The notes under the pieces are model-generated. The model was not told the origin of the DNA. It was given only the letters and a program-made list of their open reading frames with translations, and searched no databases. From positions 62,001 to 126,000 of the IMG/VR virus record IMGVR_UViG_3300028654_000384: a stretch of 64,000 bases of DNA; one strand, written 5' to 3'. Every line of letters starts with the position of its first letter. Positions within the stretch are counted from its first letter, which is position 1. The translations under genes and the position numbers were made by a program. Of this stretch, positions 3,579 to 22,499 are shown in pieces.

Positions 3579-3959
3579 ATGGCAAAGCGTAAGGGTTATC
3601 GGCCCCGTCACCTGTTGGTCAAGGACTTCACCACGATCCTCTTTGCTCACGACCTGATGGGTTTGACGGGCTTGGGCTGTCCCACTGACGAGTACGAGAG
3701 CGAGGCGCTGAGCATCGTCGCCCGGATGACGGAGACACAGATGCTCGATGCGGCGTCAGGTGCGTCGGCTGAGGATGCGCTGGCAGTGACCCTCCACATC
3801 ATCAGGGACGTCTTCGAACTGTGGTTCGGCACCATCGTCGACGGGGCGAAGGCCCTTGACTTGGCCCGAGTGTTATTGGCTGAGCACGTGGCATCGTACC
3901 CCGCGTCTAAGAAGAAGACGGCACCCGTGGCTGATACGAGCCCTGAATCAGGTGTATGA
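3579..3959 (+). CDS. Hypothetical protein
   Basis: ORF directly after promoter; DEYESEA motif. Confidence 0.7.
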   Translation: MAKRKGYRPRHLLVKDFTTILFAHDLMGLTGLGCPTDEYESEALSIVARMTETQMLDAASGASAEDALAVTLHIIRDVFELWFGTIVDGAKALDLARVLLAEHVASYPASKKKTAPVADTSPESGV

Positions 3960-4969
3960 TCTGTGACATGAGCCGCAATGTCTTGATCACGGGTGCAGCG
4001 GGGTTTGTCGGCAGTCACCTGTGCAAACACTACCTCGATGCGGGTGACAGAGTCTGGGGCATCGACAACTTCTGCTCGTCAGACGAGCACTCTGAACACT
4101 TGGCGGCACTGAAGGCCCACTCGAACTTCACTTTCTCCATGGCTGATGTTACCGATGATCACCAAGACTGGTTTTCAATCTTTGAATTTAACATGGATAA
4201 TGTCAAGTTCGACCTCATCTTAAATTTCGCGTGTCCCGCCTCTCCTCCGTCATACCAAGACATGCCGGTTTTGACGATGATGACGTGCACACAGGGTACC
4301 GCAAACGTGCTCGACCTGGCAGATGAACACGGTGCCGTCGTCGTCCACGCATCGACCAGTGAGGTGTACGGTGAGCCGCTGGTGTCACCGCAACGCGAAG
4401 ACTATAGAGGAAATGTAAATCCGTATGGGCCTCGGGCTTGTTACGACGAGGGTAAACGTGCTGCCGAAGCGCTGTGCTACGACTACTTGCACATGTACGG
4501 CGTCGATGCGCGTGTGGTTCGGGTGTTCAACACTTATGGGCCGCACCTCGATCAGCACGACGGCCGTGTCATCAGCAACTTCATCAGGCAAGCGTTGCAG
4601 GGTGAACCACTGACGGTGTATGGGCACGGCCAGCAGGGGCGGTCGTTCTGCTACGTTGATGACTTGGTGCGTGGCATCGTCGCGGTGGGTGACCTGCCTG
4701 CGAACCCGCAGGGACCCATCAACCTCGGCAACCCTAATGAATACAGGGTGATTGAGCTGGCGACGAGGGTGCTTGAGAAGGTCGGTGCACTTGAACGGCA
4801 CCGCTTGCGCGGCGATCAAATCATCCACAAGCCCATGCCCATCGACGACCCGACGCAGAGGTGCCCCGACATCACGCGGGCCAAAGAGCTGCTCGGGTGG
4901 GAGCCACGGGTTGGGCTCGACGAGGGCCTAGATCGAACGATAGGCTACTTTCGGCGCGTCGTCAGGTGA
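3956..4969 (+). CDS. uxs: UDP-glucuronate decarboxylase (UDP-xylose synthase)-like extended SDR
   Basis: TGAAGFVGSHL, ACPASPP, STSEVYG, VNPYGPRACYDEGKR, DGRVISNFIRQALQGEPLTVYG closely follow UXS1-family motifs. Confidence 0.85.
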   Translation: MICDMSRNVLITGAAGFVGSHLCKHYLDAGDRVWGIDNFCSSDEHSEHLAALKAHSNFTFSMADVTDDHQDWFSIFEFNMDNVKFDLILNFACPASPPSYQDMPVLTMMTCTQGTANVLDLADEHGAVVVHASTSEVYGEPLVSPQREDYRGNVNPYGPRACYDEGKRAAEALCYDYLHMYGVDARVVRVFNTYGPHLDQHDGRVISNFIRQALQGEPLTVYGHGQQGRSFCYVDDLVRGIVAVGDLPANPQGPINLGNPNEYRVIELATRVLEKVGALERHRLRGDQIIHKPMPIDDPTQRCPDITRAKELLGWEPRVGLDEGLDRTIGYFRRVVR

Positions 4970-5015
4970 GTTCTCCGCACGTGGGTGATACTTAACCACG
5001 AAGGAATTCATCACC

Positions 5016-5456
5016 ATGACGATCGATCCGGTTCAAGTAGCCGCGTATGTTACCGCTGGCGCACTCGCTGCGACGAAGTTGTTTAGTGCGTTTCAACCAC
5101 TGTGGCAAAAACTGCCGCGGTGGCTCGCTGTCGCCTTCCCGATCCTCGTGTTGGATCTTCCGCAGGTTGCCGTCTACTTCGGCCATACTGCCACGACGGG
5201 ATCGCTATCGACAGCGTTGATCGCTTCACTCGCCTTGCTCGTCCCGGGCGTCGCTGAGGCTGAACTTACGCCGCAGCAGGTGACCGCCGCGAAAATCGCT
5301 GCGATTAAATCTGCCGCATCTGACACCGCCGACGCTGCCCAAGCGACGAAAGACGCCCACGCAATGCCCGTGGGTGAAGGCGCACCGATGCCGGCGACTG
5401 TTGCTACGGGTGTCACGGGCACCGCCACTGTCGTGGTGACGCCGCCGAAGGCATAA
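5016..5456 (+). CDS. Membrane protein (holin-like?)
   Basis: Several hydrophobic segments, Ala/Thr-rich tail, TACTTA at 4989. Confidence 0.55.
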   Translation: MTIDPVQVAAYVTAGALAATKLFSAFQPLWQKLPRWLAVAFPILVLDLPQVAVYFGHTATTGSLSTALIASLALLVPGVAEAELTPQQVTAAKIAAIKSAASDTADAAQATKDAHAMPVGEGAPMPATVATGVTGTATVVVTPPKA

Positions 5457-5484
5457 GTTCTTACGTAGAGAGTTTGTTGTTGTG

Positions 5485-5502
5485 TGGTCTCGAAAGAGAC
5501 CA
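5485..5502 (+). terminator. Perfect 7-bp hairpin with GAAA loop, possible terminator
   Basis: TGGTCTC-GAAA-GAGACCA after the 5016 gene; lacks a clear U-tract. Confidence 0.45.
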
Positions 5503-5539
5503 TTCGACGTTAAGGGCGTAGAGTGTTGTACTATGTACA

Positions 5540-6054
5540 ATGAGCCTAAGCATCGAACGTGGTCATGAGTTTGAAAGTAATATGTTTCCCGCCGGCATTG
5601 GTGCAGCTTATGGCATTGTGATGGAAATTGATTCTAGCTCTACTCCCGATCGAATCACTGGAAAGTGGTTGATTGGTGACAAACTGCGTAATTTCTGTGC
5701 TGTTGCGCACAATGAATTTCACCTTCATCATCCTCAATCTGAAATTGGACTGAGTAGGGCGAAGACTATTGGCCAGTGCGACTTTCTGGGTATTGACACA
5801 GTCGGCGTTGTCTCAATGTGGTATGAACAGGAAAAGTGAGGAGAAAATACATGACGAAAAGTTACATATCAGATGTTGATGCGCAACAAGGTGACTTCTA
5901 TGAAGACACTGAACATCGCGTGTATAAGTGTGTCGCAAGGTGCGGCATCACTGTGACGGAAGGAAAGACATCATACACAACTTCATGGGAGTGCGTGTCA
6001 AAGGATGTTGATCTTGCGCCCGTGGGGCATATGAAACAAACTTCACGGCGCTGA
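5540..6054 (+). CDS. Two small AT-rich hypothetical ORFs (5540-5839, 5851-6054)
   Basis: ORF track; GAGGAG ribosome site before 5851; lower GC than flanks. Confidence 0.55.
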
Positions 6055-6504
6055 CGAAAAATTAACGACCTACGGGGCGCACAATTTCTTGGGCACCCCA
6101 TAGATCTGGTTAGATGGTCGTGGCTAGCGCTTAAGCAGAGCGCGCAGCACGATGATCAAAACCAGTAGTGTCTGTAGGTTGTGAATCACGGTGTGTCTCC
6201 TTTCTCGAAGGTGGGAGAAATATCAGGTCAACGGATGGTGCCGTTGACCTGATGCGTTTGTGGGGAACTATTGCCTTCACAGATCGTAAATAGGTGATGG
6301 TTGTCGTATAATACATGTTGGGATGCCTCGTCATGTTCACGAATTTTCTGTGGGCGGTTTGTGGGCACAGATAACCATTCACATTGATACGTATTCACTC
6401 ATGCAACAATCCGCTTTCCGTGATACGGGTGCACACAGTGATGATCATTCAATGATGTTTGTGCGAAGTGATCTTCTCCACCTCTCCATTGTACGATCCC
6501 ACCC

Positions 6505-7352
6505 ATGCCCAGCGATTACTTGGTCGTGACTGACGCAGAACGTGAAAACGCACGCCGCAAGGCGGAGATCATGGCCGCCAACATCATCCGTCGGGGCTGT
6601 GCAGGGGACCGCTCGCGCGTGACGGTAGAAAGTGACTGCAACCGTGGCCTCATCGTCGAACAGCTCCGCAATCGAGGCGATGAGGCCTGGTGGAACGATC
6701 ACTGGGAGAAAGCACAAGTGGTCGGCGATGACGGAGGCATTGACACCCGCGATGGGACTGACCTCAAGGTTATCAGGCCAGGCAATCGCTTCGTGTTTGT
6801 GAAGCGTCGCAGTGCCCGCGCGGAGAACTATGAGGCCTGGGAACTCGACGATGAGTGCATTTTTGCGAGGCGCATGGGCACCTTCACTCGCGGCGACATT
6901 CGCGACAACATCTGGGGCGGTGTCAGCGGTGTCCTCGTCAGTGACCTGAAGTAGTGACCTTCTCCGCCTTTCCGTGGTACAGTCTACTCATGCCCAATGA
7001 CGACGGCTCCGACGCAGGCCTCCGCCGCACCCACCTCCTCTACGAACTGTTGATCACCGAGCTCATTGTCGGCAGGAATACGATCGCCGATGAATTGACG
7101 AAGTCTAAACTCGACCAAGATCCCTACTACCTGATGGGCCAAGCCTCCCTCAACGTCGCCCTGCACAGCGCTGCGTCGGCGTTGGAGGATAGCGGCCTGA
7201 TCGACGAGGATTCGATGCGGTGCCGTGACTGCGGCATGCGCTTCGTCGACCACGATGAGGATACGCACAACGAAGACTTGCCCGAGATTCCGGGTGCAGC
7301 GACTTCGCCCGAGGGTTCTGCTCCCACCAAGCCGCCGAGCAAGCTGAACTGA
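6505..7352 (+). CDS. Two hypothetical proteins (6505-6954, 6990-7352)
   Basis: ORF track; second has TGG-TACAGT -10 just upstream of ATG 6990. Confidence 0.6.
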
Positions 7353-7861
7353 TGTCTTGTGTTGTTTACGTCATTACCAATCGCGTCAATGGCAAACGAT
7401 ACGTTGGGAAAACGATCCACCAAACTACAAGGTGGGCAACCCATGTCAGGGCGGCATTTACAAGTGGGTCACAATATGCGATTCATCGCGCGATCCGTAA
7501 ACACGGAAAAGAGAATTTTGACTTTCAGGTCGTCAGTGAGCACGCCACTGAAGAGGAAGCGTTTATCGAAGAAACTCGGTTGATCCGAGAGTTGAATACG
7601 ACTAAACTGGGCTACAATATGAACGAGGGTGGGAAAGGTGGTATTTCACCGACCGAAGAGGTCAGACAAAAAATCGTTCTAAAAGCCACTGGTCGGAAGC
7701 AAAGCGCTGAACAACGACAACAGGAGAGTGAACGGACGACCGGATCAGGAAACCCGATGTACGGTCGTAAACAGAAGCCTGAAACGCTTGAGAAGATGCG
7801 TATCAAACGTCTTGAATATTGGGCGAAGCGACGAGCTGAACGTACGTCTAAGGTACAATAA
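7352..7861 (+). mobile_element. Free-standing GIY-YIG homing endonuclease with NUMOD3-like repeats
   Basis: VYVITNRVNGKRYVGKT, E..LI....T...GYN, GSGNPMYGRKQ; AT-rich; abuts dnaE. Confidence 0.85.
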
Positions 7862-7864
7862 AAC

Positions 7865-10800
7865 ATGTCACGCGTTCCGAAGAAGTTTGTTGGTCTACAC
7901 GCTCATACAGGGTTTAGTCCCTTCGATGGACTTGGGTATCCGGATGAACACTTCATCTGGTGCATGGAAAACGGTTTGGACGCGCATACTATCACGGACC
8001 ATGGTAACTGCTCTGCTTATGCGCATGCCATGCTCTGGGCAGAAAAGTGGAACACTGAGCACAAAGACAAGCCCTTCAAGTATATTCCCGGCGTCGAGGC
8101 GTACTTTCATCCCGATTTGGCGCAATGGTCTCGAGATAAGGCCGCCGCTGATCAAGCCACCATCGACAAGGCCGCCGCCAAGAAGCTACGCACCAAGCTC
8201 GAGATCCTGCAGACCAAGCTCGTCGTCAATACTGACGGCGATGACGAGTCGGAGTCAATTGAAGTCTCCAACGCCCTCACGCTTGAGGACGAGTCAGAAT
8301 CGAAGAGCACCAAGCACTTCAATCCTGTCAATCGTCGGCATCACCTCGTGCTACTACCCAAGAACCCTGCTGGTCTACTGAAGATCTTCGGTCTGGTGTC
8401 GCAGAGCTATTTGACCGGATTTTACCGTTTCCCGAGGCTTGATGCCAAGATGCTGCGGGAAGCCTGTAAGGAAGGCAACATCATTGCCTCGTCTGCCTGC
8501 ATTGCGGGTCAGCCTGCATACAGCGTCTTTCAAGAGGTGCAGAAGCTGAAGTTCGACGACCTAAACCAGGCGTTGCTCGACGATCCTACCACACTGGAGA
8601 AGTGCATCACTGGTGTCGGTAACACTTACGACCTGATGACGTCGGTGCTGGGCGAAGGCAATTACTACCTCGAATTGCAGTTCAATAAACTACCCGCACA
8701 GAACCTCGTCAATCGAGCCATCATCGAGTTCGCTCGCCGAGCAGGCGTCACCAAGCAACTTATCGTCACCGCCGACTCCCACTATCCACGGCCAGAGCTG
8801 TGGAAAGAGCGCGAGCTGTACAAGAAGCTCGGCTGGATGAATGCGAAGGGAATCGACGCCGATTCGCTGCCCAAGTCGAGGGACGAGCTGAAGTGTGAGC
8901 TGTACCCGAAGAACGCATCGCAGGTGTGGGATGAGTACCTGCGCTCGAAGGTGGGGACGTCGTTCTATGATGACGATCTCGTCGCTGATGCAATTGAACG
9001 CACTCACGACATCGCCCACCAAGTCATCGGCCCGGTGCCGCCCGATCGGTCACCCAAGTTTCCGAATGAGCGGCTGATCCCGAAGGGCACCAAGTCGTTC
9101 GATCACCTCGTCAAACTGTGCAAGGAGGGCCTGACCAAGAGGGGATTGCAGGACAAGCCTGCCTACGTTGAGCGGTTGAAGGAGGAGCTGGGCGTCATCA
9201 AGGCGATGAAGAATGCCGACTATTTCGTGTCATACCAGAAAATCATGGAGTTGGCGCGAAAAGTGGTACTATGTGGGCCTGGGAGAGGCAGTGGTGGTGG
9301 AAGTCTCGTCGCCTACGTGCTCTACATCACTGACCTCGACCCGTTGAGGTGGGAGCTCCCATTTTCTCGCTTTCTCTCGATCTACAGGAAAGGTGCGCCG
9401 GACATCGACAGCGATCTCGCCGATCGCGACAAGGTGCTCGAGCAACTACGCAACTTCTTCGGCTTTGAGAACGTCGTCCCGATCAGCAACTACAACACCT
9501 TCAAGCTGAAGACGCTGGTCAAGGACATCGGCAAGTTCTACAGCGTGCCCTTCGAGGAGACCAATGCAGCAACAAGGACAGTGGAAGACGAAGTTCGCAA
9601 GGCAACGATGAAGGAAAGCGACGACAAGAACCTTTTCACACTGACTTTTGATGATGCGATGTTGTATAGCCCGTCGTTCAAGGCCTTCATCGACAAGTAC
9701 CCGCAGGTCGCCGAGAGCATCAAGATCCTGTTCAAGCAAAATCGTAGTTTAGGACGTCATGCTGGAGGTGTTCTCATAACTGATGACCTGCCTAACAAGA
9801 TGCCGCTGGTCGCTAGTCACGGTGAACCTCAATCGCCCTGGGTAGAAGGCGTGGGATTTAAACATTTAGAATATATTGGTGCGTTTCTTAAGTACGATCT
9901 CTTGGGTCTTGAAACTTTGCGCTATATCGAGCGCGCAATTGAGTTGATCCTGATCAAGGAAGGCAATCCCAAGCCCACCTTTCCCGACATCAAGGCGTGG
10001 TACGACGCCCACATGGCACCCGATGTCATTGACTTCAACGACCAGAAGGTCTACGAGGTCTATGCCGAAGGCAAGTGGTCGGGCATCTTTCAATGTACGG
10101 GTCAAGGCGCCCAACGCCTGTTCAAGAAGGCTAAGCCCAAGTCGATCATCGACATCGCCGCCTTGACGTCGATCTATCGTCCCGGCCCATTGGCCGCCCA
10201 CGTCGACAAGCTGTGGTTGGAGCACGAGCACACACCCTACGATTGGGGTCACCCGCTGATCAATGAGACACTGAAAGAAACGCGAGGATTGTTGGTTTTT
10301 CAGGAATCTGTGATGGCTCTCGTCAACAAGGTCGCCGGCTTTCCCATGGCCGAGACCGACGAAGTGCGCCGTGCCATCATGAAGCGCAGCATCTCGGGAG
10401 GTGAGGCCGCCAAGAAGAAGGTGAAGGAGCTCGAGGACAGCATTGTCTCCGGCGCGGTCAAGAACGGCGTGCCTGAAGCGACAGCTCGCAAGATGTACGA
10501 GACGATATGTTTCATGAGCGGCTATGGGTTCAATCGCGCCCACGCGTGTGGGTATAGCATTGTCTCGTACTGGTGCGCGTGGATGCTGACCCACCACGAG
10601 GAACAGTGGCTGTGCGCCTACCTCGAGGCGATGTCGACGACCCCCGACAAGCGCGCCAAGGCCTTCGGCGAGGTCAAGGCCCTGGGCTACCAGATCGTGC
10701 CCATCGACATCAACCACGCGCAGTTGGGGTGGACGGTGCTGCCCGGCAAGAAGCTGATGCCGTCGATGACGTCGGTCAAGGGGGTGGGTGACTCCGCCGT

Positions 10801-11566: not shown

Positions 11567-11593
11567 TGCGGGTGAATAATTAGGGTCAATTCC

Positions 11594-12751: not shown

Positions 12752-13699
12752 ATGTCACTGTGCGGAGGTTGTGGATCTACGTTTGACCCATGGTCATTGA
12801 GTGGAAAAGGTAGATTTGTAAGTCGATGGTGTCGATGTTGTGTTGATGGCACTAAACGTCGTCAAGTGTTTGATTGTTTAGGTTGTCATCAACACATTGA
12901 TCGTTGGGTTGAAGGTCTTTATACCTCACCAACTTTTTGTAATAAGTCATGTAGAATGAAGTATGAATATGCTAACAATATTAGGCGTAATTTTCTTAAT
13001 GATAAAACAACGTGGGAATGGTGGGTCAGTAAATACGGCGAAGAAGAAGCACTTCGTAGAAAAGAGCATCATCGCGACGCAACATCACTAGCTACGTCGG
13101 GAGAAAATAATCCGATGTATGGGCGTCATGATCATGTACACGGTTTGAAACGTTTTGCCAAAGAAAAGACTGGTAAAACACTTGAAGAAGTGCATGGCGT
13201 TGATCTAGCAAGGAAAATGCGCGAGAACAAGTCATTACATGCGCGTGGGTCAAATAATCCTGCGTATGGCAAGGTGTATACGAAAGGTGGAAAGAGCATT
13301 AAGGGTTACTACAAAGACAAGTTTTTTCGTAGTCTACTCGAGTATTCATTCATGAAACATCTTGAGAGTGAGGGGTTATCGCTTAACATTGATGTTGATT
13401 ATGAGTGCTTCATTGTTCCATATGTGTTCAATGGTGCTGATCGGACATATCGCGTTGATTTTTACGTGCCAAGTCGTCATGCAGTGTATGAAGTCAAACC
13501 TGCTTATGCTATGAAAGGTGTGACGCCCATCAATGAAGCAAAATGGAGTGCAGCACGTGTATACTTCAACCAACGCGGCATACAATTTTATGTAATGTCT
13601 GAGTTAGATTTTCCAAAGATCATGTTTGATATCGCGAGACAAGACAGCGATGTGACATGGAAAGAAGAGACGTTCAAGTATTTCAAGAGGTCAAAATGA
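12752..13699 (+). mobile_element. Free-standing homing endonuclease, TnsA-like PD-(D/E)XK domain with NUMOD-like repeats
   Basis: GENNPMYG, GSNNPAYG repeats; FRSLLE...YRVDFYV....YEVKP; strongly AT-rich. Confidence 0.75.
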
Positions 13700-14418
13700 T
13701 GCAACGAGTTATCATGTTTGTTGGGCCAGATCGTTGTGGCAAAACGCAAATTGCTCAAGCTCTTGCAAAAAAGATGGGTGCGATGTACTTCAAAGCATCG
13801 TGGGAACATGCCGCATATCAACAAAGCATAGGTCTTCGTCAAGGTCGAGATTTAGATCGGGGTGCAGTCGGTGCTAATCTTGATTTAGTGCGCCATCAAG
13901 TGCGCGAAATTGCTCGACAAGATGATATTGGATTTTGGGTTGCTGAGACAAAAGATAGTGATGGTAAACTCACTCGACAGACTCTTGAACCCAAGGCATT
14001 TACGAAAAAAGATCGATTTTTGAATGAATTACGGTTTGCCGATCCGCGTACATTTGATTTTGTGAAACAATTAGGAGAACAACTTGGAACAAGCGTTGTG
14101 TTTGATCGTGCATACCCTTGTGAAAGTGCGTATTCAACCGTAATGTGCCGTGAAACCGATCAATCAGCGCTTGAACAAATTGATCGTTGGTGGTCATCTC
14201 TTAATACTTTGATTATTGTGTGTCGTCGATCTAACTACAGTGGCATTACAGACGATCTTGATTCTTCAATCAATGGTGACGTACTTCAAAAACTTGATGA
14301 CGCATACATGGAATTTACCACGTGGACGCGGTGCTTCTTCAAAGAACTCAACGTCGACGATGAAGACCTCGACCGCGAAGTCAATGAGATCCTGCAGTTC
14401 ATCGGATGGGAGAAGTGA
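13696..14418 (+). CDS. dNMP (thymidylate-type) kinase with internal insertion
   Basis: P-loop GPDRCGKT, VVFDRAYPCE. Confidence 0.75.
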   Translation: MMQRVIMFVGPDRCGKTQIAQALAKKMGAMYFKASWEHAAYQQSIGLRQGRDLDRGAVGANLDLVRHQVREIARQDDIGFWVAETKDSDGKLTRQTLEPKAFTKKDRFLNELRFADPRTFDFVKQLGEQLGTSVVFDRAYPCESAYSTVMCRETDQSALEQIDRWWSSLNTLIIVCRRSNYSGITDDLDSSINGDVLQKLDDAYMEFTTWTRCFFKELNVDDEDLDREVNEILQFIGWEK

Positions 14419-14604
14419 GGTGATCCATGTGGCTCTATGACAGCGTGGCGAACGTGTGGCACATGTGGGCAATTGCCAGCCCAACGATCGGCACCAAGGC
14501 ATGGTGCGGCTTCGCTCTAACGGCAGATTGCACCCCCACGGGCGGCACCACCGGCATCCGCTGCGTATCGTGCAGTTACCTCTTCACCAAGTCGAGGCCC
14601 CAAC

Positions 14605-15099: not shown

Positions 15100-15108
15100 A
15101 ATCAGCAC

Positions 15109-15660: not shown

Positions 15661-15884
15661 AGCTCGGCCTCATCTTCGTTGGGTTGTTGGCGCTGTGCGG
15701 GTGTTCGCAGACCGCACAGGTCCTGTCGAAGGATGGAACTAAGGTCGCGGCGGTGTGTGAGGGTGGTAACTGGGTGCTGTGCATGACCACAACGTGCCCC
15801 AACGGTTACGACGTTGTCAGCATTGACATGCGAAACAGTGAACGCGCGCCACAGGACGCCAACGCGATCGTCAGGTGCAAGTGA
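15657..15884 (+). CDS. Small lipoprotein
   Basis: MKLGLIFVGLLALCGC lipobox-like. Confidence 0.6.
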   Translation: MKLGLIFVGLLALCGCSQTAQVLSKDGTKVAAVCEGGNWVLCMTTTCPNGYDVVSIDMRNSERAPQDANAIVRCK

Positions 15885-15891
15885 GTGTTGA

Positions 15892-16983
15892 TCAGTCAGC
15901 CAGTCTTGACAGGTGCTCGTACACCAGCTCATCGATGATCTGCCTGGCCTCGTCAATGGGATCCCACGTCTGCGTGTGATCAAAGCCCAGCTTCTTGACC
16001 TTCAACTTGCCGTCGGGGTCACGGGTGACCTTGGCATCCTGGCCTGGGTTGAACCGCGTGTTGGTGGTGGGCCCGGGACCGTAGGCCTTGCCCTTGTAGC
16101 GGGTGTGGACGGGACGGTTGTTCTTGCGGCCGTAGATGCGGTAGGTGTCCTTCGACGCGCCGGGGGTACGGACGCTGTTGGCCGGGTCAGCCTTGGGTTT
16201 CTTGGCCCAATCGGGCTGTTCTGCCTTGGGACGGTCATATGTACCAGCGCTGGGTGGCTTGGCCCAATAAGGTTGTTCTGCCTTGGGCGGGGGTGGGCGA
16301 CCGGGTCGAGGTTTTTCGACATAGCCCTTCTTGCGCTTGTCATTGATCTGTGCCTGCGCCACGTGGACCGCCATGCCGTTTGCACTGTAATCCTCGGTAG
16401 TGGTTTGACCCGCTGAACCGATGCGGCCCCATCGCTTGGTGAGTTTATTACCACTAACGCTGATCTCCCAGAACTTGCTCGATGAACCACCCACGAATTC
16501 GAAGTAGCGAGGCTCTCTGAACCCGCTCTTTCGTTGCTCCTCCTGCGCTTTCTTCGCCGAGGCCTGGTCATTGTATGTTCCACCGGCCGATGCTGGTGGG
16601 GGTGGCTGCTTTTTCCACCATGCATCGCGCTCGTCGCGTTTGCTGGAATTCCATCCGTCTTGTGGCGGGGGAGGTGCTGCCTTGGGTGGTGCCGCATGGG
16701 CCTTCGCCGCCTTGGGATCTTCATAACCCTTGAATTCGGCGCCGAACCTGAACTTGTTGGTGGGGTTGAGCAGCCGATCCTTGGCATTGTTGATGTCGAC
16801 CATCTTGCCGTGGGCGTTGGGATCGCCTGCGTTGCGGTCGGGGTGGTGCTGGAGGGCCAACTTCTTCCATGCCGCCTTGATCTGATCCTCCGACGCACCC
16901 TTGGGCACCCCGAGGATATCATAGGCGTTGAGCAGGGCCTCTTGGATCAGGCGCCTGACCTCGTGGATGTTGAGCCTCATCAC
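15892..16983 (-). CDS. J-domain plus WGR-domain protein with N-terminal tag
   Basis: AYDILGV...LALQHHPDRN; FWEISV......RWGRIGS.GQ...KRKKGY; TATTTA upstream. Confidence 0.85.
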   Translation of the reverse strand: MMRLNIHEVRRLIQEALLNAYDILGVPKGASEDQIKAAWKKLALQHHPDRNAGDPNAHGKMVDINNAKDRLLNPTNKFRFGAEFKGYEDPKAAKAHAAPPKAAPPPPQDGWNSSKRDERDAWWKKQPPPPASAGGTYNDQASAKKAQEEQRKSGFREPRYFEFVGGSSSKFWEISVSGNKLTKRWGRIGSAGQTTTEDYSANGMAVHVAQAQINDKRKKGYVEKPRPGRPPPPKAEQPYWAKPPSAGTYDRPKAEQPDWAKKPKADPANSVRTPGASKDTYRIYGRKNNRPVHTRYKGKAYGPGPTTNTRFNPGQDAKVTRDPDGKLKVKKLGFDHTQTWDPIDEARQIIDELVYEHLSRLAD

Positions 16984-17030
16984 CGTAAATAGGGGTGTAG
17001 ATGGGCGTGTGCGGGAGTAAAATGAAGAGC

Positions 17031-18344
17031 ATGAAGCGACTACTGGTGACGACGCAGTTGAGCAACTTTGTCGACGGTAAAGCAGATCTCGCTTGCGATA
17101 GCGGGTGGCAAATGTGCATCAACCGCATCCGCGAGATGCTACGATTGAACCCCAACCTCTACGTCGACATCATGGGACCCAATGAGGATCAGTTGGTGCA
17201 GCACCCCGCCGACGTCAATCCTGATCTGGTTGCGATGTACGGCGAGATCGACGTGCCACGATTGCGGTACATTGAGCACCCAATCGTCACCAGCGCGCTG
17301 ATCACCCGCTATGACTTCAAGTGGTCGGAGATCGCCGACTCAATGGGCCTCGAGGAACACAAGGCTGATGTCACCCAGCGCTATGACGCCGTCTATGTGA
17401 ATGATCCCATGCAGCTCCGCGCCTTCAAGGCCATGTTCCACGTCGTCGGGGGCTACCAACCCAAGTTCTTCGTGCACTCACACTTCGTCGACGTCCCCGA
17501 GGTCCCCAAGTTCCCAGCCGAAGCGTCGCTGTGGCTGGGCCAGTGCGAGGCCACGCTGAAGGCTGACTACAACTTCTGGCAGTGCGAGTCGGCGATGAAC
17601 CAGTTCTTCGACAGCATGGGCAAGTGGTTCGTGCAGGACGTGGTCGACGACGTGCGGGCTAAATCGCAAGCGTCTGATGACGGGTATTCGATTGCGGAGA
17701 TCACTTCGCCCATATGCCAAGCTAATCTACGGTTTACGGACGCTGAGTGGCGTGCCAAGACTAATGGTAAGGTGGTACTGTTCTTTCCCAATCGCATTAG
17801 CCAGAGTTCAAGTGATTACACGCGTGGTTGGTGGTTCACACATGAGTTCATGCCCAAACTTCGACAACGTCGCCAAGACTATGTCGTGGTGTGCGGTAAT
17901 CCTAACATGAAGCTGTCGAATGATGAACTCGTTCAATTATGTGGGCCTCATGGTTATGTTAAGCTGCACGATCACACGTTCAATCGTGATGAGTATAAGT
18001 ACGTTGCGTCACACAGTGACATTGTCGTAGCGCTGTATGATGCCAAGAGTGACGCGTACGGTGGGACGGCCTCTCGAGAATGCATTGAATTGGGGTGTGT
18101 ACCATGCTGGCCTTCTTGCAATGAATATTTGAGCCTTGCTCGAGAAGCAAGAGTTGAACACCTATTGGCCAAGTCTGACTTGTCTGATTTAGTAGACGTC
18201 GCAGACAATCTCATTGGTCTTGCGGGTTCATCATCTTTGCCATTGAAACAGTACAATGAACGATTGCGTGAAGTTGTACGTAGGCGCTGTTCGTTTGAAC
18301 AGACTGTTCCCACAATGATGAAAAAGATGGGTCTACTATGCTAA
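17031..18344 (+). CDS. GT-B glycosyltransferase-like protein (candidate DNA glycosyltransferase)
   Basis: Two Rossmann-like halves, FPNRIS, DIVV...GGTASRECIELGCVP; start placed 7 nt after TAAAAT; near epimerase and hydroxymethylase. Confidence 0.55.
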   Translation: MKRLLVTTQLSNFVDGKADLACDSGWQMCINRIREMLRLNPNLYVDIMGPNEDQLVQHPADVNPDLVAMYGEIDVPRLRYIEHPIVTSALITRYDFKWSEIADSMGLEEHKADVTQRYDAVYVNDPMQLRAFKAMFHVVGGYQPKFFVHSHFVDVPEVPKFPAEASLWLGQCEATLKADYNFWQCESAMNQFFDSMGKWFVQDVVDDVRAKSQASDDGYSIAEITSPICQANLRFTDAEWRAKTNGKVVLFFPNRISQSSSDYTRGWWFTHEFMPKLRQRRQDYVVVCGNPNMKLSNDELVQLCGPHGYVKLHDHTFNRDEYKYVASHSDIVVALYDAKSDAYGGTASRECIELGCVPCWPSCNEYLSLAREARVEHLLAKSDLSDLVDVADNLIGLAGSSSLPLKQYNERLREVVRRRCSFEQTVPTMMKKMGLLC

Positions 18345-19363
18345 TTGAAGTTCTCGAAACATGGATCAAGACGCCTCGATACAAGAATCGTGGTAAACGA
18401 CGATTGTTAGCGATTGTTGCGTGTGATGCGTGCGGCAAACGTGAACAGCTACCATACATCAACGGAATGTGGGAGACTCGAAAACGCGTCTGTTCACCTG
18501 AGTGTGATACAAAACTACGATCTCGTGGTGGTGCGCTTTATGCAAGTATCACGGCGACGAACGTAGAGCGATATGGCGCAAAGTACGCATCAGCGACTGA
18601 TTTAGGAAAGCACAAACAGGAAGAGACAAATCTTAGAAAGTATGGATATAAGGCATCCTCACAATCACCTGAAGTTGAAGCTAAACGACTTAACACGTGT
18701 CTTTCTATGTATGGCGGACCTGCAGCAACAAGTGACGCGAACGTCAGAGCGAAAGTCAAGTTGACGTGTGATACCAAGTTTGGTGGTGGTGTGTTGCTCG
18801 ATGATGATATTCGAGAGCAATTCAACGCAACTATGGTAGAACGACATGGTGCACCGTGGGCAGCACAATCAGCAATCATTCTCGCTAAACAACATCAGAC
18901 CAACATTGAACGTTATGGAGTTGCGTTTCCATTCCACACAGATGAAGCGAAGTCAAGAGCACACTCACCCCAAGCGCTACTCAAACGCCATGAGACCATG
19001 AAGCGTAATGGCACATACAGGACTTCAAAGCCTGAAGACCGTCTCTATCAAGTTCTGTGTGAGATGTTTGATATAGACGACGTCGACCGCCAGACGCTCG
19101 TATACAAGTGGCCAATTGACTTCTACGCCAAGAGCATTGACACCTACGTACAGTACGACAGTTATTGGCATGGCGTCGGACGCGCAATCATTGAGGTCGC
19201 TGAACACAAGGTGCCTCGAGACGTCTCGATTCACAAGAAGATGCTGACTGACATCGCTCAGGATGCGTACTTCGCCGAACGTGGCATGCGGCTCATTCGT
19301 GTGCAGAGCCTGACGCCTGAACAGATTACCCCCGCGGCCATGCGTCGCATGGGCCTGCTGTGA
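18338..19363 (+). mobile_element. Free-standing homing endonuclease, Vsr/DUF559-like C-terminal domain
   Basis: Repeated TN.E(R/K)YG units; TSKPEDRLY, IDFY, YDSYWHG, D.Y....G.RLIRV; AT-rich. Confidence 0.7.
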
Positions 19364-19364
19364 C

Positions 19365-19691
19365 ATGAAACCCGGTGACCTCATCGAGTGGGCGTACAAG
19401 TCGGACGGCAAAGTCGTTCACCCCCATGAAGAATTGTGGTCATCGATCGAGAAACGCTACGTGCCCATCGGCGGCCTACACCTGTTCGTCAGCAATGTTG
19501 ACGGCACCCTGACATGGCTGCCTCTGGGTGAGAATTGTAAGGGGTTGCTCCACGCGCGCGAGGCTGATACGATGGCCAGGTCGGGCCGGTCGTTCGCGAC
19601 GAGCGGTTGCTCCACGCGCGCGAGGCTGATACCGACCTGTACGGCGAGTGGTGCGACGACGAAGTCGGTTGCTCCACGCGCGCGAGGCTGA
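19365..19691 (+). CDS. MKPGDL-family small protein whose C-terminus is encoded by a CRISPR-like array
   Basis: Clear paralog of 24293 and 24550; stop codon lies in the third repeat. Confidence 0.7.
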   Translation: MKPGDLIEWAYKSDGKVVHPHEELWSSIEKRYVPIGGLHLFVSNVDGTLTWLPLGENCKGLLHAREADTMARSGRSFATSGCSTRARLIPTCTASGATTKSVAPRARG

Positions 19692-19694
19692 TAC
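19543..19694 (-). CRISPR. Cas-less mini-array: three identical 28-nt repeats, two 34-nt spacers, type I-E-like repeat
   Basis: GGTTGCTCCACGCGCGCGAGGCTGATAC at 19543, 19605, 19667; unrelated equal-length spacers; reverse complement plus next base is 19/29 identical, ungapped, to the E. coli I-E repeat. Confidence 0.8.
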
Positions 19695-19742
19695 GGTAGG
19701 CGTGCCGAGACGTCGCCGATTGTACCCACGCCTGTACCACAC

Positions 19743-19771
19743 CTGAACACTGATCTCTCATGTGGTACAGT
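19743..19771 (+). promoter_or_regulatory. Sigma70-type promoter, leaderless
   Basis: CTGAAC-17 nt-TACAGT, ATG 7 nt downstream. Confidence 0.7.
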
Positions 19772-19778
19772 CTAACCC

Positions 19779-20735
19779 ATGACCGAACGGGTATTGATCA
19801 CGGGCGCGGCGGGTTTCATCGGCTCAAACCTGGTCACCCGGTGCCTGGCCGAAGGGTGGGTCGTCCGCGGCGTCGACGACATGAGCAGTGGCCACCGAGA
19901 ACTGCTGCACCCCGCCTTTAATACTGGTAGCCTGTTGATCGGCGACTTTGCCGCTGATTTCGTCCTCAACTCGATCAGGGCACAGGCCTTCGACGTCGTC
20001 ATTCACCTGGCGGCGACGCCCCGCGTCAGCTATTCCGTCGAACACCCGCTGGAAACGCACGACAACAACGTCACCAAGACGCTGAAGTTGCTCGACGCCT
20101 GCACGGGCAACGTCAAACGCTTCGTCTTCGCCAGCTCCAGTGCCGTCTATGGTGGCGCGCTGGAGCTGCCCACTCCCGAGACGGCACCCAAGGAACCCAA
20201 GTCGCCCTATGCACTCCAGAAGTCGATCATTGAGGACTACCTGAAGTTGTACAGCAACCTCTACGGCCTCGACAGCGCTTGCCTGCGGTTCTTCAACGTC
20301 TTCGGCCCGGGCCAGTTGGGTAGCAATCCCTATGCGACGGCGATCGCGGCGTGGCTGACAGCGATCAAGCGCGGCGAGCCCATGCGCAGCGACGGTGACG
20401 GCTTTCAAAGCCGCGACATGTGCTACGTCGACAACGTCACTGATGCCTGTGCCAAGGCGGTGCAGAGCAAGGTACCCCTGATGGGAGCGTGTTACAACGT
20501 GGCCTGCGGCGACAATGTCTCCAACAACGACATCTTGGCGGTGTTGCGGGCCCATTACCCAGAGGCGACCGTCGTCAATGCGCCGGCTCGACGGGGCGAC
20601 GTGATGCACACCATGGCCGACGTGTCGAAGGCCCAGCAACAGTTGGGCTACGTGCCGCTGGTCAAGTTCTGGCCGGGCCTCATCAAGACGATGATGTGGT
20701 ACGAGCGTGAGTGGGAACAGATCAGGAGCCTGTGA
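19779..20735 (+). CDS. NAD-dependent UDP-sugar 4-epimerase (GalE/WbpP-like)
   Basis: TGAAGFIGSNL, HLAA, FASSSAVYG, SPYALQK, LRFFNVFGPGQ, GDGFQSRD. Confidence 0.85.
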   Translation: MTERVLITGAAGFIGSNLVTRCLAEGWVVRGVDDMSSGHRELLHPAFNTGSLLIGDFAADFVLNSIRAQAFDVVIHLAATPRVSYSVEHPLETHDNNVTKTLKLLDACTGNVKRFVFASSSAVYGGALELPTPETAPKEPKSPYALQKSIIEDYLKLYSNLYGLDSACLRFFNVFGPGQLGSNPYATAIAAWLTAIKRGEPMRSDGDGFQSRDMCYVDNVTDACAKAVQSKVPLMGACYNVACGDNVSNNDILAVLRAHYPEATVVNAPARRGDVMHTMADVSKAQQQLGYVPLVKFWPGLIKTMMWYEREWEQIRSL

Positions 20736-21162
20736 TGAAGATCACCTTGACGGCCGATGAAGTGCGCGAGGCCTGCGCGATGTACGTCCGCAGCAAGTAC
20801 GAAAATTTGCGGGGTGCAACTCTGGCGGTGCAACTGCACCGTCGTCAACTGACGCCGCAGGAGGAATTCGACGCCTCGCACGGCTACGTCAACGACATGA
20901 CGGACCGCGTTGAAGCCGTGGTGGACGCATGAGCAATGTCAGGTCAGTCGCAGATTACCATGCAAATCACGCAATTGAAGCACTCAAAGTGCTCATTGAG
21001 TCAACGCCTGAAGGCGAGTTCGTAGATATCCCACAAACACGTCAACAGCTCGAACAGATGCGTCAAAAATTGATCGGCATCGAACACATGAAGGATAGCG
21101 TCGCATACATCGATTATCAACTTGAACAGGGTGATTTGGGAAGGGTACGATTCGCAACATGA
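20711..21162 (+). CDS. Two small hypothetical ORFs (about 20711-20932, 20929-21162)
   Basis: ORF track with coupled stop/start overlaps. Confidence 0.55.
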
Positions 21163-21914
21163 TTACTAACACCGTCTCTGACATGCGACTGGAGCTGGCA
21201 CGTCACCTCGCTGACCAGCGCTTCACCAGCGTCAACCGTGAGGCGTCAATGACGTCGCTGGTCGGCGCCAAGACGATCGAACTGTGTGGTGTCAACTTCA
21301 TCGCCGACCAAGAAGTGCTGTTCGGCAAGCTGAACCACGATTACCTCAAGCGTGAGGAACAGTGGTACCAGTCAATGTCGTGCAGCGTTGATGACTTTCC
21401 GGGTGGCGCCCCCGCGGTGTGGGAGGCAATCGCCTCGAGGGATGGACTGGTCAACTCAAACTACGGCTACCTCATCCGTCACTCCGACAATGGTTATCAG
21501 TTCGACCACGTCGTTAACGAGTTACGAAGGAACCCGGAGTCCCGCCGAGCGGTGATGATCTACACCCGGCCGTCGATGTGGGTCGACTACAATAAGGGTG
21601 GGCGCTCTGACTTCGTCTGCACCAACACGGTGCAGTACCTGATCCGCGACGGTTCGGTGAGTGCTGTGGTGAATATGCGCTCACAAGATTCACACATCGG
21701 ATATAAGAACGATCGCGAATGGCAGCGATTGACGCTCAACGCCGTCGCTGATGCGGTGGGAGTACCAGCGGGCGTGCTGATGTGGCAGGTGGGGTCGCTC
21801 CATGTCTACCAACGTGACTTCTACCTCGTCGATCACTTCATCAAGACGCGTGAAGTCAACATCACCAAGGCGCAGTACCGTGAACTGTATCCCACGTCGC
21901 CGTATAATGAGTGA
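21159..21914 (+). CDS. dCMP hydroxymethylase (T4 gp42-like, thymidylate synthase fold)
   Basis: SDFVCTNTVQYLIRD..VNMRSQDSHIGYKNDREWQ parallels T4 gp42 SDFMCTNTVQYLIRD..VNMRSNDVVFGFRNDYAWQ, including the cytosine-specifying Asp. Confidence 0.85.
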   Translation: MITNTVSDMRLELARHLADQRFTSVNREASMTSLVGAKTIELCGVNFIADQEVLFGKLNHDYLKREEQWYQSMSCSVDDFPGGAPAVWEAIASRDGLVNSNYGYLIRHSDNGYQFDHVVNELRRNPESRRAVMIYTRPSMWVDYNKGGRSDFVCTNTVQYLIRDGSVSAVVNMRSQDSHIGYKNDREWQRLTLNAVADAVGVPAGVLMWQVGSLHVYQRDFYLVDHFIKTREVNITKAQYRELYPTSPYNE

Positions 21915-22497: not shown

Positions 22498-22499
22498 GC

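What the first reader, a model, noticed from the sequence alone, without database searches (positions are those of the whole stretch)
3956..21914. Candidate pentosyl (xylosyl/arabinosyl)-hydroxymethylcytosine DNA modification pathway
Seen: a gp42-like dCMP hydroxymethylase (21159, GYKND with the cytosine-specifying Asp), a GT-B glycosyltransferase (17031), a UDP-sugar 4-epimerase (19779), a UDP-xylose-synthase-like enzyme (3956), a UDP-sugar pyrophosphorylase-like gene (56051), a dNMP kinase (13696) and a dCMP deaminase (26006). Established: T4 makes hmC with gp42 and glucosylates it; RB69 carries an arabinosylated cytosine derivative; UXS converts UDP-GlcA to UDP-xylose, and 4-epimerisation gives UDP-arabinose. 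Inference: this high-GC, DnaE-using phage may put a pentose on hmC by a UDP-xylose route. No UDP-glucose dehydrogenase is in the window, and the sugars could serve surface glycans.
Basis: partly seen in the sequence, partly recalled or inferred. Interest (0 to 1): 0.78.

Follow-up and report, generated by a model that had tools for sequence, protein, structure and literature searches.

The report
Phage hydroxymethylcytosine glycosylation gene module
A soil jumbo phage carries a T4-like enzyme for making hydroxymethylcytosine next to a previously unclassified sugar-transferase and sugar-nucleotide enzymes, so its DNA cytosines are probably sugar-coated to escape bacterial nucleases, but whether the sugar is a pentose remains unproven.

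Summary
21159-21914 is a T4 gp42-type dCMP hydroxymethylase (E 2e-71). It has the catalytic Cys and the three residues that separate hydroxymethylases from thymidylate synthases and from 5-hydroxycytosine synthases. 17031-18344 matches no sequence family, but its model is a GT-B/GT4 glycosyltransferase (Z 29), with the same structural neighbours as published phage DNA glycosyltransferases. 3956-4969 is a genuine UDP-xylose synthase. 19779-20735 is a UDP-sugar 4-epimerase of unknown substrate. 13696-14418 is a thymidylate-kinase-like nucleotide kinase homologous to RB69 gp45, not a T4 gp1 kinase. The glycosyltransferase family is narrow (153 representatives among 1.8 billion proteins). In four different phage backgrounds it sits next to a cytosine-type thymidylate-synthase homologue, three times with the kinase as well. 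A glycosyl-5hmC DNA modification is therefore well supported (about 0.7). The pentose part is weaker (about 0.3). UXS is present in every contig of this clade that was searched. It is missing from the flanks read around the transferase in other phages, and it persists in one relative without the transferase. The epimerase looks most like UDP-HexNAc epimerases. Relatives also carry a second sugar cluster with UDP-glucose-dehydrogenase-like genes. This is a new variant of a known kind.

The parts
3956..4969 (+). UDP-glucuronate decarboxylase (UDP-xylose synthase, UXS type SDR)
   Evidence: PDB 4gll/2b69 human UXS1 E 1e-88, 301 bits against 117 bits for the next family. The motifs GAAGFVGSH, ASTSEVYG and CYDEGKR align to UXS1. 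Orthologues of 49-63% identity occur in all 8 related contigs searched.
13657..14418 (+). Thymidylate-kinase-like nucleotide kinase (probable start 13696), candidate 5hm-dCMP kinase. This copy has a ~60-aa insert.
   Evidence: Family profile against RB69 gp45: hhalign 94%, E 9e-8. Profile against PDB: deoxynucleoside kinase 2jas E 8e-6, and YorR. The model's fold neighbours are almost all thymidylate or deoxynucleoside kinases. The gene is conserved between DnaE and the GT in nearly all clade loci with the GT. Homologues lie beside the GT in L058, L060 and L066, and a faint Thymidylate_kin gene lies beside it in L064.
17001..18344 (+). GT-B (GT4-like) glycosyltransferase of an unclassified family (probable start 17031), the candidate hmC-DNA glycosyltransferase
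   Evidence: No sequence-family hit. AF2 pLDDT 90.9. VIA Z 29 to BshA, 27.9 to PimA 2gej, 27.2 to MshA 3c4q, 26.9 to SPS 6kih. The family has 153 representatives in 1.84 billion proteins. Members lie beside Asp-type TS homologues in four backgrounds.
18338..19363 (+). Homing-endonuclease-like insertion between the GT and the epimerase (not part of the pathway)
   Evidence: PF24308 DUF7487, and phrog_3339 homing endonuclease. GC3 is 0.47. It is absent at this place in L001, where the GT and the epimerase are adjacent.
19779..20735 (+). NAD-dependent UDP-sugar 4-epimerase, substrate unresolved
   Evidence: PF01370 E 6e-50. PDB 6wjb E 1.5e-56, then WbgU and WbpP. NCBIfam GalE 154 bits and TviC 147 bits, both below the equivalog cut-offs. 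It lies next to the GT in 29 of 31 loci.
21159..21914 (+). dCMP hydroxymethylase (T4 gp42 type)
   Evidence: PDB 1b49 E 2.3e-71. About 50% identical to T-even gp42 genes. Asp three residues before the catalytic Cys (SDFVC), Asp kept in RSQD, Asp in GYKND. Only 31% identical to RB69 gp48, which reads RSQN.
23712..24296 (+). Thymidine kinase (nucleotide-metabolism context)
   Evidence: PF00265 E 2e-35.
26006..26566 (+). dCMP deaminase (diverts dCMP to dUMP for dTMP synthesis)
   Evidence: PF00383 E 2.5e-15. Syntenic in relatives.
56033..57115 (+). UDPGP-family UDP-sugar pyrophosphorylase-like protein (probable start 56051). Its link to the module is weak.
   Evidence: PF01704 37.8 bits. Atlas 0.97, TM 0.80-0.86. 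An orthologue was found only in G001 (59% identity), not in G003 or G004.

Best explanation
The region is the nucleotide and sugar part of a DNA hypermodification pathway that replaces cytosine with a glycosylated 5-hydroxymethylcytosine.

**Nucleotide steps**
1. dCMP is hydroxymethylated by the gp42-type enzyme at 21159-21914. This step rests on strong homology and on active-site residues.
2. 5hm-dCMP is phosphorylated by the thymidylate-kinase-like kinase at 13696-14418 (inferred). Host enzymes then make 5hm-dCTP, and the phage DnaE replicase incorporates it (inferred).
3. dCMP deaminase, ThyX and thymidine kinase keep dTTP synthesis separate. A dUTPase_2-family pyrophosphatase upstream of the window may deplete dCTP (inferred).

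**Sugar transfer**
4. After replication, the GT-B enzyme at 17031-18344 transfers a sugar from a UDP-sugar to the hydroxymethyl group. This rests on its fold and on gene association.
5. The linkage is probably alpha, because the fold class is the retaining GT4 type (inferred).

**Sugar donor**
6. The donor is made or adjusted by the adjacent 4-epimerase. It may come from the phage UDP-xylose synthase, which would give xylosyl- or L-arabinosyl-hmC. The sugar's identity is not settled.

**Function (inferred from known systems):** protection of phage DNA from restriction enzymes and CRISPR nucleases.
For: **Hydroxymethylase**
- E 2.3e-71 to T4 gp42.
- It carries the residues that PMC13326640 uses to tell products apart: acidic at ThyA L143, Asp kept at D169, Asp at N177.
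- A separate ThyX exists in the same contig, so this enzyme is not needed for dTMP.

**Kinase**
- Homologous to RB69 gp45.
- Thymidylate-kinase-like fold.

**GT**
- GT4 fold with Z 29.
- Its neighbours (3mbo, 2gej, 3c4q, 6kih, 8ixp, 7qsg, 5ze7) are also listed for the DLP3, RB69 and RL38J1 DNA glycosyltransferases in Table 1 of PMC13326640.

**Association of GT and TS**
- 29 of 29 evaluable clade loci have an Asp-type TS homologue within about 5 kb of the GT.
- Distant GT relatives sit beside such TS homologues in a PolB phage (L058), another DnaE phage (L060) and a third backbone with SHMT and dUTPase_2 (L064). L058, L060 and L064 also carry the kinase.
- It is the only GT detected in the 216-kb contig.

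**Sugar genes**
- UXS is in all 8 related clade contigs searched.
- UGD-family genes are in all four long relatives.
Against: - There is no chemical evidence. The phage is known only from rhizosphere metagenome contigs.
- Synteny within the clade is inherited, so those loci are not independent. Only about four independent contexts exist.
- The GT has no detectable sequence similarity to any proven DNA glycosyltransferase. A GT4 fold does not show the acceptor.
- No T4 gp1-type kinase and no MazG dCTPase were found.

**Against the pentose in particular**
- UXS is 12 kb away from the GT.
- UXS is absent from the flanks of GT relatives elsewhere.
- UXS is retained in G005, which has no GT or epimerase.
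- GT-bearing G009 and G010 have no epimerase orthologue.
- The epimerase resembles UDP-HexNAc epimerases.
- Relatives have a second sugar cluster that could consume these sugars.
Confidence: 0.7

Rival explanations
1. The same hmC pathway, but the GT attaches a hexose or N-acetylhexosamine (for example galactose or GalNAc). The adjacent epimerase makes this donor from host UDP-Glc or UDP-GlcNAc. UXS and the UDPGP-like enzyme would serve another glycan, such as virion or cell-surface sugars.
For: - The epimerase's best solved relatives are 6wjb, WbgU and WbpP, which I recall to be UDP-GlcNAc/GalNAc 4-epimerases.
- Its RRGDVMHTMAD segment has a small Thr where, from memory, WbpP has the Ser that widens the pocket for acetamido sugars (a lead only).
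- The epimerase, not UXS, is the gene adjacent to the GT.
- GT relatives in other phages have epimerases but no UXS in the flanks read.
- G005 keeps UXS without the GT.
- Galactose is the base-proximal sugar in phage RL38J1.
- Relatives carry a second sugar cluster.
Against: - UXS is universal in the GT-bearing clade and absent from the 96%-complete outgroup G006, which lacks this GT.
- No other GT was detected in the 216-kb contig to use UDP-xylose.
- G009 and G010 have GT and UXS but no epimerase.
Confidence: 0.35
2. The GT and the sugar-nucleotide enzymes do not act on DNA. They would glycosylate virion proteins, host envelope glycans or a small molecule, and the hmC (if made) would stay bare.
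For: - The nearest solved structures act on small molecules, lipids or polysaccharides.
- Relatives hold a large PseB/PseC-type sugar cluster typical of surface glycans.
- There is no sequence similarity to proven DNA glycosyltransferases.
Against: - The GT family is narrow. In every informative context it lies inside nucleotide-metabolism or replication modules next to a cytosine-type TS homologue, and three times with the kinase too.
- It is never seen in the second sugar cluster.
- Proven DNA arabinosyl- and glucosyltransferases have the same structural neighbours.
Confidence: 0.1
3. The GT modifies a nucleobase in RNA rather than DNA, for example a queuosine-type tRNA glycosylation. The phage encodes a CCA-adding enzyme nearby.
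For: - Weak PF12038 QTMAN_N hits in 4 of 30 family members and in P0136.
- A Swiss-Prot fold hit to tRNA-queuosine mannosyltransferase at rank 7.
- A CCA-adding enzyme at 24870-26009.
Against: - The hits are marginal (best E 0.0075).
- No queuosine genes were seen near the GT in the flanks read.
- The recurring partner is a dCMP-specific TS homologue with a nucleotide kinase, and that pairing points to DNA precursors.
Confidence: 0.04

Closest known systems
T-even phage glucosyl-5hmC system (T4 gp42, gp1, gp56, alpha-GT/beta-GT)
   Same: - A gp42-type dCMP hydroxymethylase of about 50-55% identity with the same active-site residues.
- dCMP deaminase, thymidine kinase and a separate thymidylate synthase.
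- Predicted post-replicative transfer from a UDP-sugar by a GT-B enzyme.
   Different: - The replicase is DnaE, not gp43.
- There is no gp1-type kinase. A thymidylate-kinase-like kinase is present instead.
- The GT has no sequence similarity to T4 alpha-GT or beta-GT.
- The phage encodes its own sugar-nucleotide enzymes (UXS, epimerase, UDPGP-like), which T4 lacks.
Arabinosyl-5-hydroxycytosine system of RB69, DLP3 and HY126 (PMC13326640)
   Same: - The cluster logic is the same: a TS homologue, a thymidylate-kinase-like 'nucleotide kinase' (RB69 gp45, homologous to the window's kinase), GT4-fold DNA glycosyltransferases, and phage-encoded synthesis of a UDP-pentose.
   Different: - The TS homologue there has Asn at ThyA position 169 and makes 5-hydroxy-dCMP with a flavin. 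The window enzyme keeps Asp and is gp42-like.
- UDP-arabinofuranose there comes from ribulose-5-phosphate through an isomerase, a kinase/uridylyltransferase and a phosphatase. Here the candidate route is UDP-GlcA to UDP-xylose by UXS.
- The GT sequences are unrelated at profile level.
Shewanella phage Thanatos cytosine-pentose modification (PMC12838424)
   Same: A pentose-type sugar on cytosine with UDP-xylose chemistry involved. TH1_063 is a UDP-xylose pyrophosphorylase, and a TS homologue lies next to GT-like genes.
   Different: - Thanatos activates xylose-1-phosphate with a pyrophosphorylase, and no UXS or epimerase is mentioned in the parts read (the word 'epimerase' does not occur in its text).
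- PMC13326640 lists its TS homologue among the D169N homologues that made 5hodC.
- It is a Straboviridae phage of about T4 size, which is my recollection.
Eukaryotic and bacterial UDP-xylose synthase (human UXS1)
   Same: About half of the residues are identical across the whole length, with the NAD-binding motif and the catalytic Thr/Glu and Tyr-x3-Lys motifs aligned.
   Different: It is encoded by a phage beside replication genes. Its role there is unknown, and the UDP-GlcA source was not found in this contig.

Membership tests
T4 gp42-type dCMP hydroxymethylase (5hm-dCMP synthase branch of the ThyA superfamily) | Full-length sequence similarity to gp42 well above that to thymidylate synthases | tested here: met
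   243 bits to 1b49, against at most 44 bits to MilA and 42 bits to any ThyA. PF00303 54 bits.
T4 gp42-type dCMP hydroxymethylase (5hm-dCMP synthase branch of the ThyA superfamily) | Catalytic cysteine (T4 C148, E. coli ThyA C146) | tested here: met
   FVCTNT aligns with T4 FMCTNT.
T4 gp42-type dCMP hydroxymethylase (5hm-dCMP synthase branch of the ThyA superfamily) | Asp at ThyA N177 (T4 D179), which selects cytosine | tested here: met
   GYKND aligns with T4 GFRND. The rule is stated in PMC13326640.
T4 gp42-type dCMP hydroxymethylase (5hm-dCMP synthase branch of the ThyA superfamily) | Acidic residue at ThyA L143 (admits water, so the product is hydroxymethyl rather than methyl) | tested here: met
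   Asp three residues before the Cys (SDFVC), as in T4 SDFMC.
T4 gp42-type dCMP hydroxymethylase (5hm-dCMP synthase branch of the ThyA superfamily) | Asp retained at ThyA D169 (Asn marks 5-hydroxy-dCMP synthases) | tested here: met
   The window reads MRSQD and RB69 gp48 reads MRSQN in the pairwise alignment. The diagnostic comes from PMC13326640.
T4 gp42-type dCMP hydroxymethylase (5hm-dCMP synthase branch of the ThyA superfamily) | Makes 5hm-dCMP from dCMP and methylene-tetrahydrofolate | not testable with these tools
   Needs expression and LC-MS.
UDP-xylose synthase (UXS) | Closest to characterised UXS rather than to ArnA, RmlB or GalE, with the GxxGxxG, Thr/Glu and YxxxK motifs | tested here: met
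   301 bits to human UXS1 against 117 bits or less to other SDRs. The motifs are aligned. NCBIfam holds only a model of the bifunctional bacterial type (107.6 bits, below its cut-off of 294).
UDP-xylose synthase (UXS) | Decarboxylates UDP-glucuronate to UDP-xylose | not testable with these tools
   Enzyme assay needed.
GT-B fold, GT4-like retaining glycosyltransferases | Two Rossmann-like domains superposing on GT4 enzymes over the whole length | tested here: met
   Z 29.0 with 353 residues aligned to BshA 6d9t. 957 of the 998 chains compared had Z of 8 or more. Foldseek E 2.5e-11.
GT-B fold, GT4-like retaining glycosyltransferases | Match to the sequence models of the family (Pfam Glycos_transf_1 and relatives) | tested here: not met
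   No Pfam hit for the protein, and none for 30 family members even at E of 1 or less. PF00534 and PF13692 do not match anywhere in the contig.
Phage DNA (hydroxymethyl)cytosine glycosyltransferases | Sequence similarity to a proven DNA glycosyltransferase (T4 alpha-GT or beta-GT, RB69 gp46:47) | tested here: not met
   tblastn against 50,697 phage records found no match. hhalign against RB69 gp47 gave probability 0.4%. Only fold-level resemblance was found, for example S-TIM5 'DNA alpha-GT' at TM 0.50.
Phage DNA (hydroxymethyl)cytosine glycosyltransferases | Gene linked to a cytosine-specific TS homologue across unrelated genomes | tested here: met
   29 of 29 evaluable clade loci, plus L058, L060 and L064 in other backbones. 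All the TS homologues have Cys, Asp at position -3, RSxD and Asp at position 177.
Phage DNA (hydroxymethyl)cytosine glycosyltransferases | Transfers a sugar to 5hmC in DNA | not testable with these tools
   Needs an assay on hmC-DNA.
T4 gp1 deoxynucleoside monophosphate kinase | Sequence similarity to gp1 (PDB 1dek/1del) | tested here: not met
   1dek is not among the PDB hits. RB69 gp1 finds nothing in the contig by phmmer or tblastn.
Thymidylate-kinase-like 'nucleotide kinase' of cytosine-hypermodification clusters (RB69 gp45, DLP3 gp78, RL38J1 gp214) | Homology to RB69 gp45, a thymidylate/deoxynucleoside-kinase fold, and a position in the cluster | tested here: met
   hhalign 94%, E 9e-8, 142 columns. 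Foldseek top hits are thymidylate kinases plus 3kb2 YorR, 4gmd and 1w2h, the same entries as in the paper's Table 1.
UDP-xylose 4-epimerase (UDP-L-arabinose forming) | Substrate preference for UDP-pentoses | tested here: inconclusive
   It is an SDR 4-epimerase by family. The nearest characterised relatives act on UDP-HexNAc. No UDP-xylose epimerase was available for comparison.

The most novel reading that the evidence does not exclude
A widespread clade of 200-370 kb DnaE-type soil phages replaces cytosine with xylosyl- or L-arabinopyranosyl-5-hydroxymethylcytosine. The pentose would come from a phage-encoded UDP-glucose to UDP-glucuronate to UDP-xylose (to UDP-L-arabinose) line. A previously unclassified GT-B family would install it, and that family marks cytosine hypermodification in several unrelated phage lineages. 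This would be a new DNA base and a new biosynthetic route, distinct from the ribulose-5-phosphate route to arabinosyl-5-hydroxycytosine.
Probability: 0.3. Interest if true: 0.82.

Novelty: new variant of a known kind. Interest (0 to 1): 0.62.

Why it matters
Sugar-coated cytosines are one of the main ways phages evade restriction enzymes and CRISPR nucleases. They also supply tools for epigenetic sequencing.

**What the known cases cover**
- Glucose on 5hmC (T-even phages).
- Arabinose or hexoses on 5-hydroxycytosine (RB69, DLP3, RL38J1).

**What this finding adds**
- **A new glycosyltransferase family.** It is narrow and unannotated, absent from Pfam and PHROGs, and tracks cytosine-type thymidylate-synthase homologues across phage lineages. 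It could serve as a marker for finding new DNA hypermodifications in metagenomes.
- **A candidate new sugar source.** The donor could be UDP-xylose made by UXS. This would make a pentosyl-5hmC base testable with four or five recombinant proteins, even though the phage is uncultured.

Tried and rejected
**Searches that found nothing**
- Megablast of 16000-22000 and tblastn of the GT against 50,697 phage records found no match. No cultured relative carries this GT. The best phage DnaE match is only about 30% identical.
- T4-type parts are missing from the contig: no gp1 kinase, no MazG dCTPase and no trimeric dUTPase. Only a dUTPase_2-family ORF was found, at contig 51873-52271.
- UDP-glucose dehydrogenase and the GT families GT1, GT2 and GT1_4 are absent from the 63%-complete contig. 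Seeds from relatives also found none.

**Readings I rejected**
- The TS homologue is not a 5-hydroxycytosine synthase like RB69 gp48. It keeps Asp at the diagnostic position and is 31% identical to gp48, against about 50% to gp42.
- The TS homologue is not the phage's thymidylate synthase. It has Asp at the uracil/cytosine selector, and a ThyX is present.

**Evidence I decided not to over-count**
- I did not treat the roughly 30 syntenic loci as independent support, because they are one clade. I looked for distant GT relatives instead.

**Steps not taken or blocked**
- Sequencing runs that hold the phage are all stored as assembled contigs, which cannot show base modification.

Full report
**Source.** The window is bases 62001-126000 of a single 215,857-bp viral contig from IMG/VR. 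The contig is linear, CheckV rates it 63% complete, and its GC is 57.5%. Near-identical sequence occurs in at least 15 rhizosphere metagenome runs. No cultured phage is close to it. Megablast of the region found nothing, and the best tblastn match to its DnaE in 50,697 phage records is about 30% identical.

**The hydroxymethylase (observation).** ORF 21159-21914 matches T4 dCMP hydroxymethylase (1b49) at E 2.3e-71 over almost its whole length. The next families are MilA at 1.6e-10 and thymidylate synthases at 7e-10 or weaker. It is about 50% identical to the gp42 genes of T-even phages.

**The other listed genes (observation).**
- ORF 3956-4969 matches human UDP-xylose synthase at E 1e-88 (301 bits), against 117 bits for the next SDR. 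The NAD-binding and catalytic motifs align.
- ORF 19779-20735 is an SDR 4-epimerase. Its best solved relatives are 6wjb, WbgU and WbpP. Its NCBIfam scores for GalE (154 bits) and TviC (147 bits) fall below the equivalog cut-offs.
- ORF 26006-26566 is a dCMP deaminase.
- ORF 56033-57115 is a UDPGP-family protein.

**The glycosyltransferase.** ORF 17001-18344 has no hit in Pfam, PHROGs, NCBIfam or PDB sequences.
- An alignment of 30 homologues gave an AlphaFold model with pLDDT 90.9.
- The model is a GT-B/GT4 fold: Z 29 to BshA, 27.9 to PimA, 27.2 to MshA and 26.9 to sucrose-phosphate synthase.

**The kinase.** The ORF at 13657-14418 shows only a P-loop to single-sequence searches and has no similarity to T4/RB69 gp1.
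- A profile of 22 orthologues hits deoxynucleoside kinase and YorR in PDB.
- The same profile is homologous to RB69 gp45 (hhalign 94%, E 9e-8).
- The model's fold neighbours are thymidylate kinases.
- It is therefore a thymidylate-kinase-like nucleotide kinase. This is the same kind as the 'nucleotide kinase' found in the published cytosine-glycosylation clusters of RB69, DLP3 and RL38J1.

**Which product does the TS homologue make?** Lee et al. (PMC13326640) showed that RB69 and DLP3 carry arabinosyl-5-hydroxycytosine, not a modified hmC.
- Their TS homologues make 5-hydroxy-dCMP, and Asn at E. coli ThyA position 169 marks them.
- T4-type hydroxymethylases keep Asp169, have an acidic residue at L143 and have Asp at N177.
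- The window enzyme has SDFVC (Asp at the L143 position), MRSQD (Asp169 kept) and GYKND (Asp177).
- In a direct alignment RB69 gp48 reads MRSQN, and the two proteins share only 31% identity.
- The contig also encodes a ThyX at 47777-48688 and a dUTPase_2-family ORF at 51873-52271. dTMP synthesis is therefore covered separately, as in T4.
- I conclude that the enzyme is a 5hm-dCMP synthase. This rests on homology and residues, not on an assay.

**Is the GT tied to cytosine modification within the clade?** The GT family search found 355 proteins, all unnamed, many of them on contigs of 100-370 kb. In 31 loci from IMG/VR and JGI the gene order is conserved: DnaE, kinase, GT, epimerase, TS homologue, HslV-like, CCA enzyme, dCMP deaminase.
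- A TS homologue follows the GT in all 29 loci that are not cut by a contig end. This includes L011, where only Pfam found it.
- The TS homologues are of three types: gp42-like, about 280 aa, and about 335 aa. All have the Cys, Asp at position -3, RSxD and Asp177.
- This synteny is inherited within one clade, so it counts as little more than one observation.

**Is the tie independent of the clade?** I searched 1.84 billion representatives with the family profile. The family is narrow, with 153 proteins at E of 0.001 or better. Four distant members gave informative contexts.
- **L058 (a PolB phage):** TS homologue, thymidylate-kinase-like gene, epimerase, UDG-family gene, GT.
- **L060 (another DnaE phage):** UDG-family protein whose gene includes a stretch homologous to the kinase, GT, TS homologue, methyltransferase, dUTPase, dCMP deaminase, three further GT1 genes and an epimerase.
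- **L064:** GT, thymidylate-kinase-like gene, dUTPase_2, dCMP deaminase, a 408-aa TS homologue and SHMT.
- **L065:** GT, nucleoside deoxyribosyltransferase-like gene, U32 peptidase and dCMP deaminase.
- The TS homologues in L058, L060 and L064 again carry the cytosine/hydroxymethyl signature.

The GT's structural neighbours also appear in the fold-hit table published for experimentally supported DNA arabinosyl- and glucosyltransferases. BFVD neighbours include GTs of phages KARL-1, Muldoon and SP-15, and a cyanophage 'DNA alpha-GT'.

**What is the sugar? Evidence for a UDP-xylose route.**
- UXS orthologues (49-63% identity) occur in all eight related clade contigs searched.
- UXS is absent from G006, a 96%-complete outgroup that also lacks this GT.
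- G009 and G010 have GT and UXS but no epimerase orthologue. This would fit direct use of UDP-xylose.
- All four long relatives encode UGD-family proteins. G001 has a full three-domain 441-aa one and also an orthologue of the UDPGP-like gene. In G001 the whole line UDP-Glc, UDP-GlcA, UDP-Xyl could therefore be phage-encoded.
- No other GT was detected in the 216-kb contig.

**What is the sugar? Evidence against a UDP-xylose route.**
- UXS lies 12 kb from the GT.
- It is not in the flanks of GT relatives in other phages.
- It stays in G005, where the kinase is followed directly by the hydroxymethylase with no GT or epimerase. G005 is a 44%-complete fragment.
- The epimerase resembles UDP-HexNAc epimerases.
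- The UGD genes of the relatives sit in a separate ten-gene cluster with PseB-like and DegT-like enzymes and weak GT hits, which could feed another glycan.
- I put the pentose reading at about 0.3, and a hexose or HexNAc on hmC at about 0.35.

**Comparison with known systems.** Functionally this is a T4-like hmC pathway joined to the cluster logic of the arabinosyl-5hoC phages: TS homologue, thymidylate-kinase-like kinase, GT4-fold transferase and phage-made UDP-sugar. Four things differ:
- the base (hmC, not hoC);
- the transferase family, which is unrelated in sequence;
- the candidate sugar route, UXS instead of the ribulose-5-phosphate route;
- the host virus, a DnaE jumbo phage from soil.

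No paper in the library describes a UXS-linked or xylosyl-hmC phage modification. The nearest is Thanatos, where a pyrophosphorylase makes UDP-xylose.

**Verdict.**
- It is a new variant of a known kind.
- Confidence is 0.7 for glycosyl-5hmC DNA and about 0.3 for a pentose.

Noticed in passing
window 7352-7861, 12752-13699, 18338-19363: Three homing-endonuclease-like ORFs interrupt the replication and nucleotide module: GIY-YIG+NUMOD3, NUMOD3+TnsA-like, and DUF7487. Their GC3 is low (0.34-0.47, against roughly 0.65-0.83 for most neighbouring ORFs). The third splits the GT-epimerase pair, which is adjacent in relatives.
   Followed up: partly
window 13657-14418: The kinase gene has GC3 of 0.34. 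It also has a ~60-aa insert (residues ~53-113, pLDDT mostly below 60) that is absent from all 21 orthologues. It may have been co-converted with, or invaded together with, the neighbouring endonuclease gene.
   Followed up: partly
L032 1463-11766 (G001), also L033, L034, L035: All four long relatives share a second sugar cluster that is absent from the window's incomplete contig. It contains a GT1_4-like gene, a PseB-like 4,6-dehydratase, a DegT aminotransferase, a 326-aa UGD-like protein lacking the C-terminal domain, and a NUDIX+cytidylyltransferase. G001 alone adds a full UGD and a GT2-like gene. It looks like a nonulosonic or amino-sugar pathway of unknown target.
   Followed up: partly
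contig G000:C1 47777-48688 and 51873-52271 (10-14 kb upstream of the window): A ThyX-type thymidylate synthase and a dUTPase_2-family pyrophosphatase. The second is a candidate dCTPase/dUTPase for the hmC pathway.
   Followed up: partly
window 15892-16983 (-), 21802-23081, 24870-26009, 26884-27639, 31630-32409: A DnaJ+WGR protein on the opposite strand, a pair of HslV/proteasome-like ORFs, a CCA-adding enzyme, an Fe/Mn superoxide-dismutase-like protein and a carbon-nitrogen hydrolase. This is an unusual set of auxiliary genes.
   Followed up: no
L042, L046-L048 (DnaE match spans 5.0 kb); L064 13971-17260: The DnaE gene of several relatives is about 1.3 kb longer than in the window. In L064 it is called as two genes, the second with an Intein_splicing domain. 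This suggests inteins or introns in the polymerase gene.
   Followed up: no
L065 2500-6402: A distant GT relative lies beside a nucleoside deoxyribosyltransferase-like gene, a U32 peptidase and a dCMP deaminase, with no TS homologue in the 7-kb contig. RB69's arabinosyl-5hoC cluster also contains a U32 peptidase (gp50). This may be a different cytosine chemistry.
   Followed up: no
L058 4758-5330, L060 5215-6285: UDG-family proteins sit directly upstream of the GT in two unrelated phages. In L060 the protein includes a stretch homologous to the kinase. The role is unknown.
   Followed up: no
GT family (A1); P0136 in L064: A few family members give weak matches to the N-terminal domain of tRNA-queuosine mannosyltransferase (PF12038, best E 0.0075), and there is a Swiss-Prot fold hit to that enzyme. 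It is another glycosyltransferase that acts on a modified nucleobase.
   Followed up: partly
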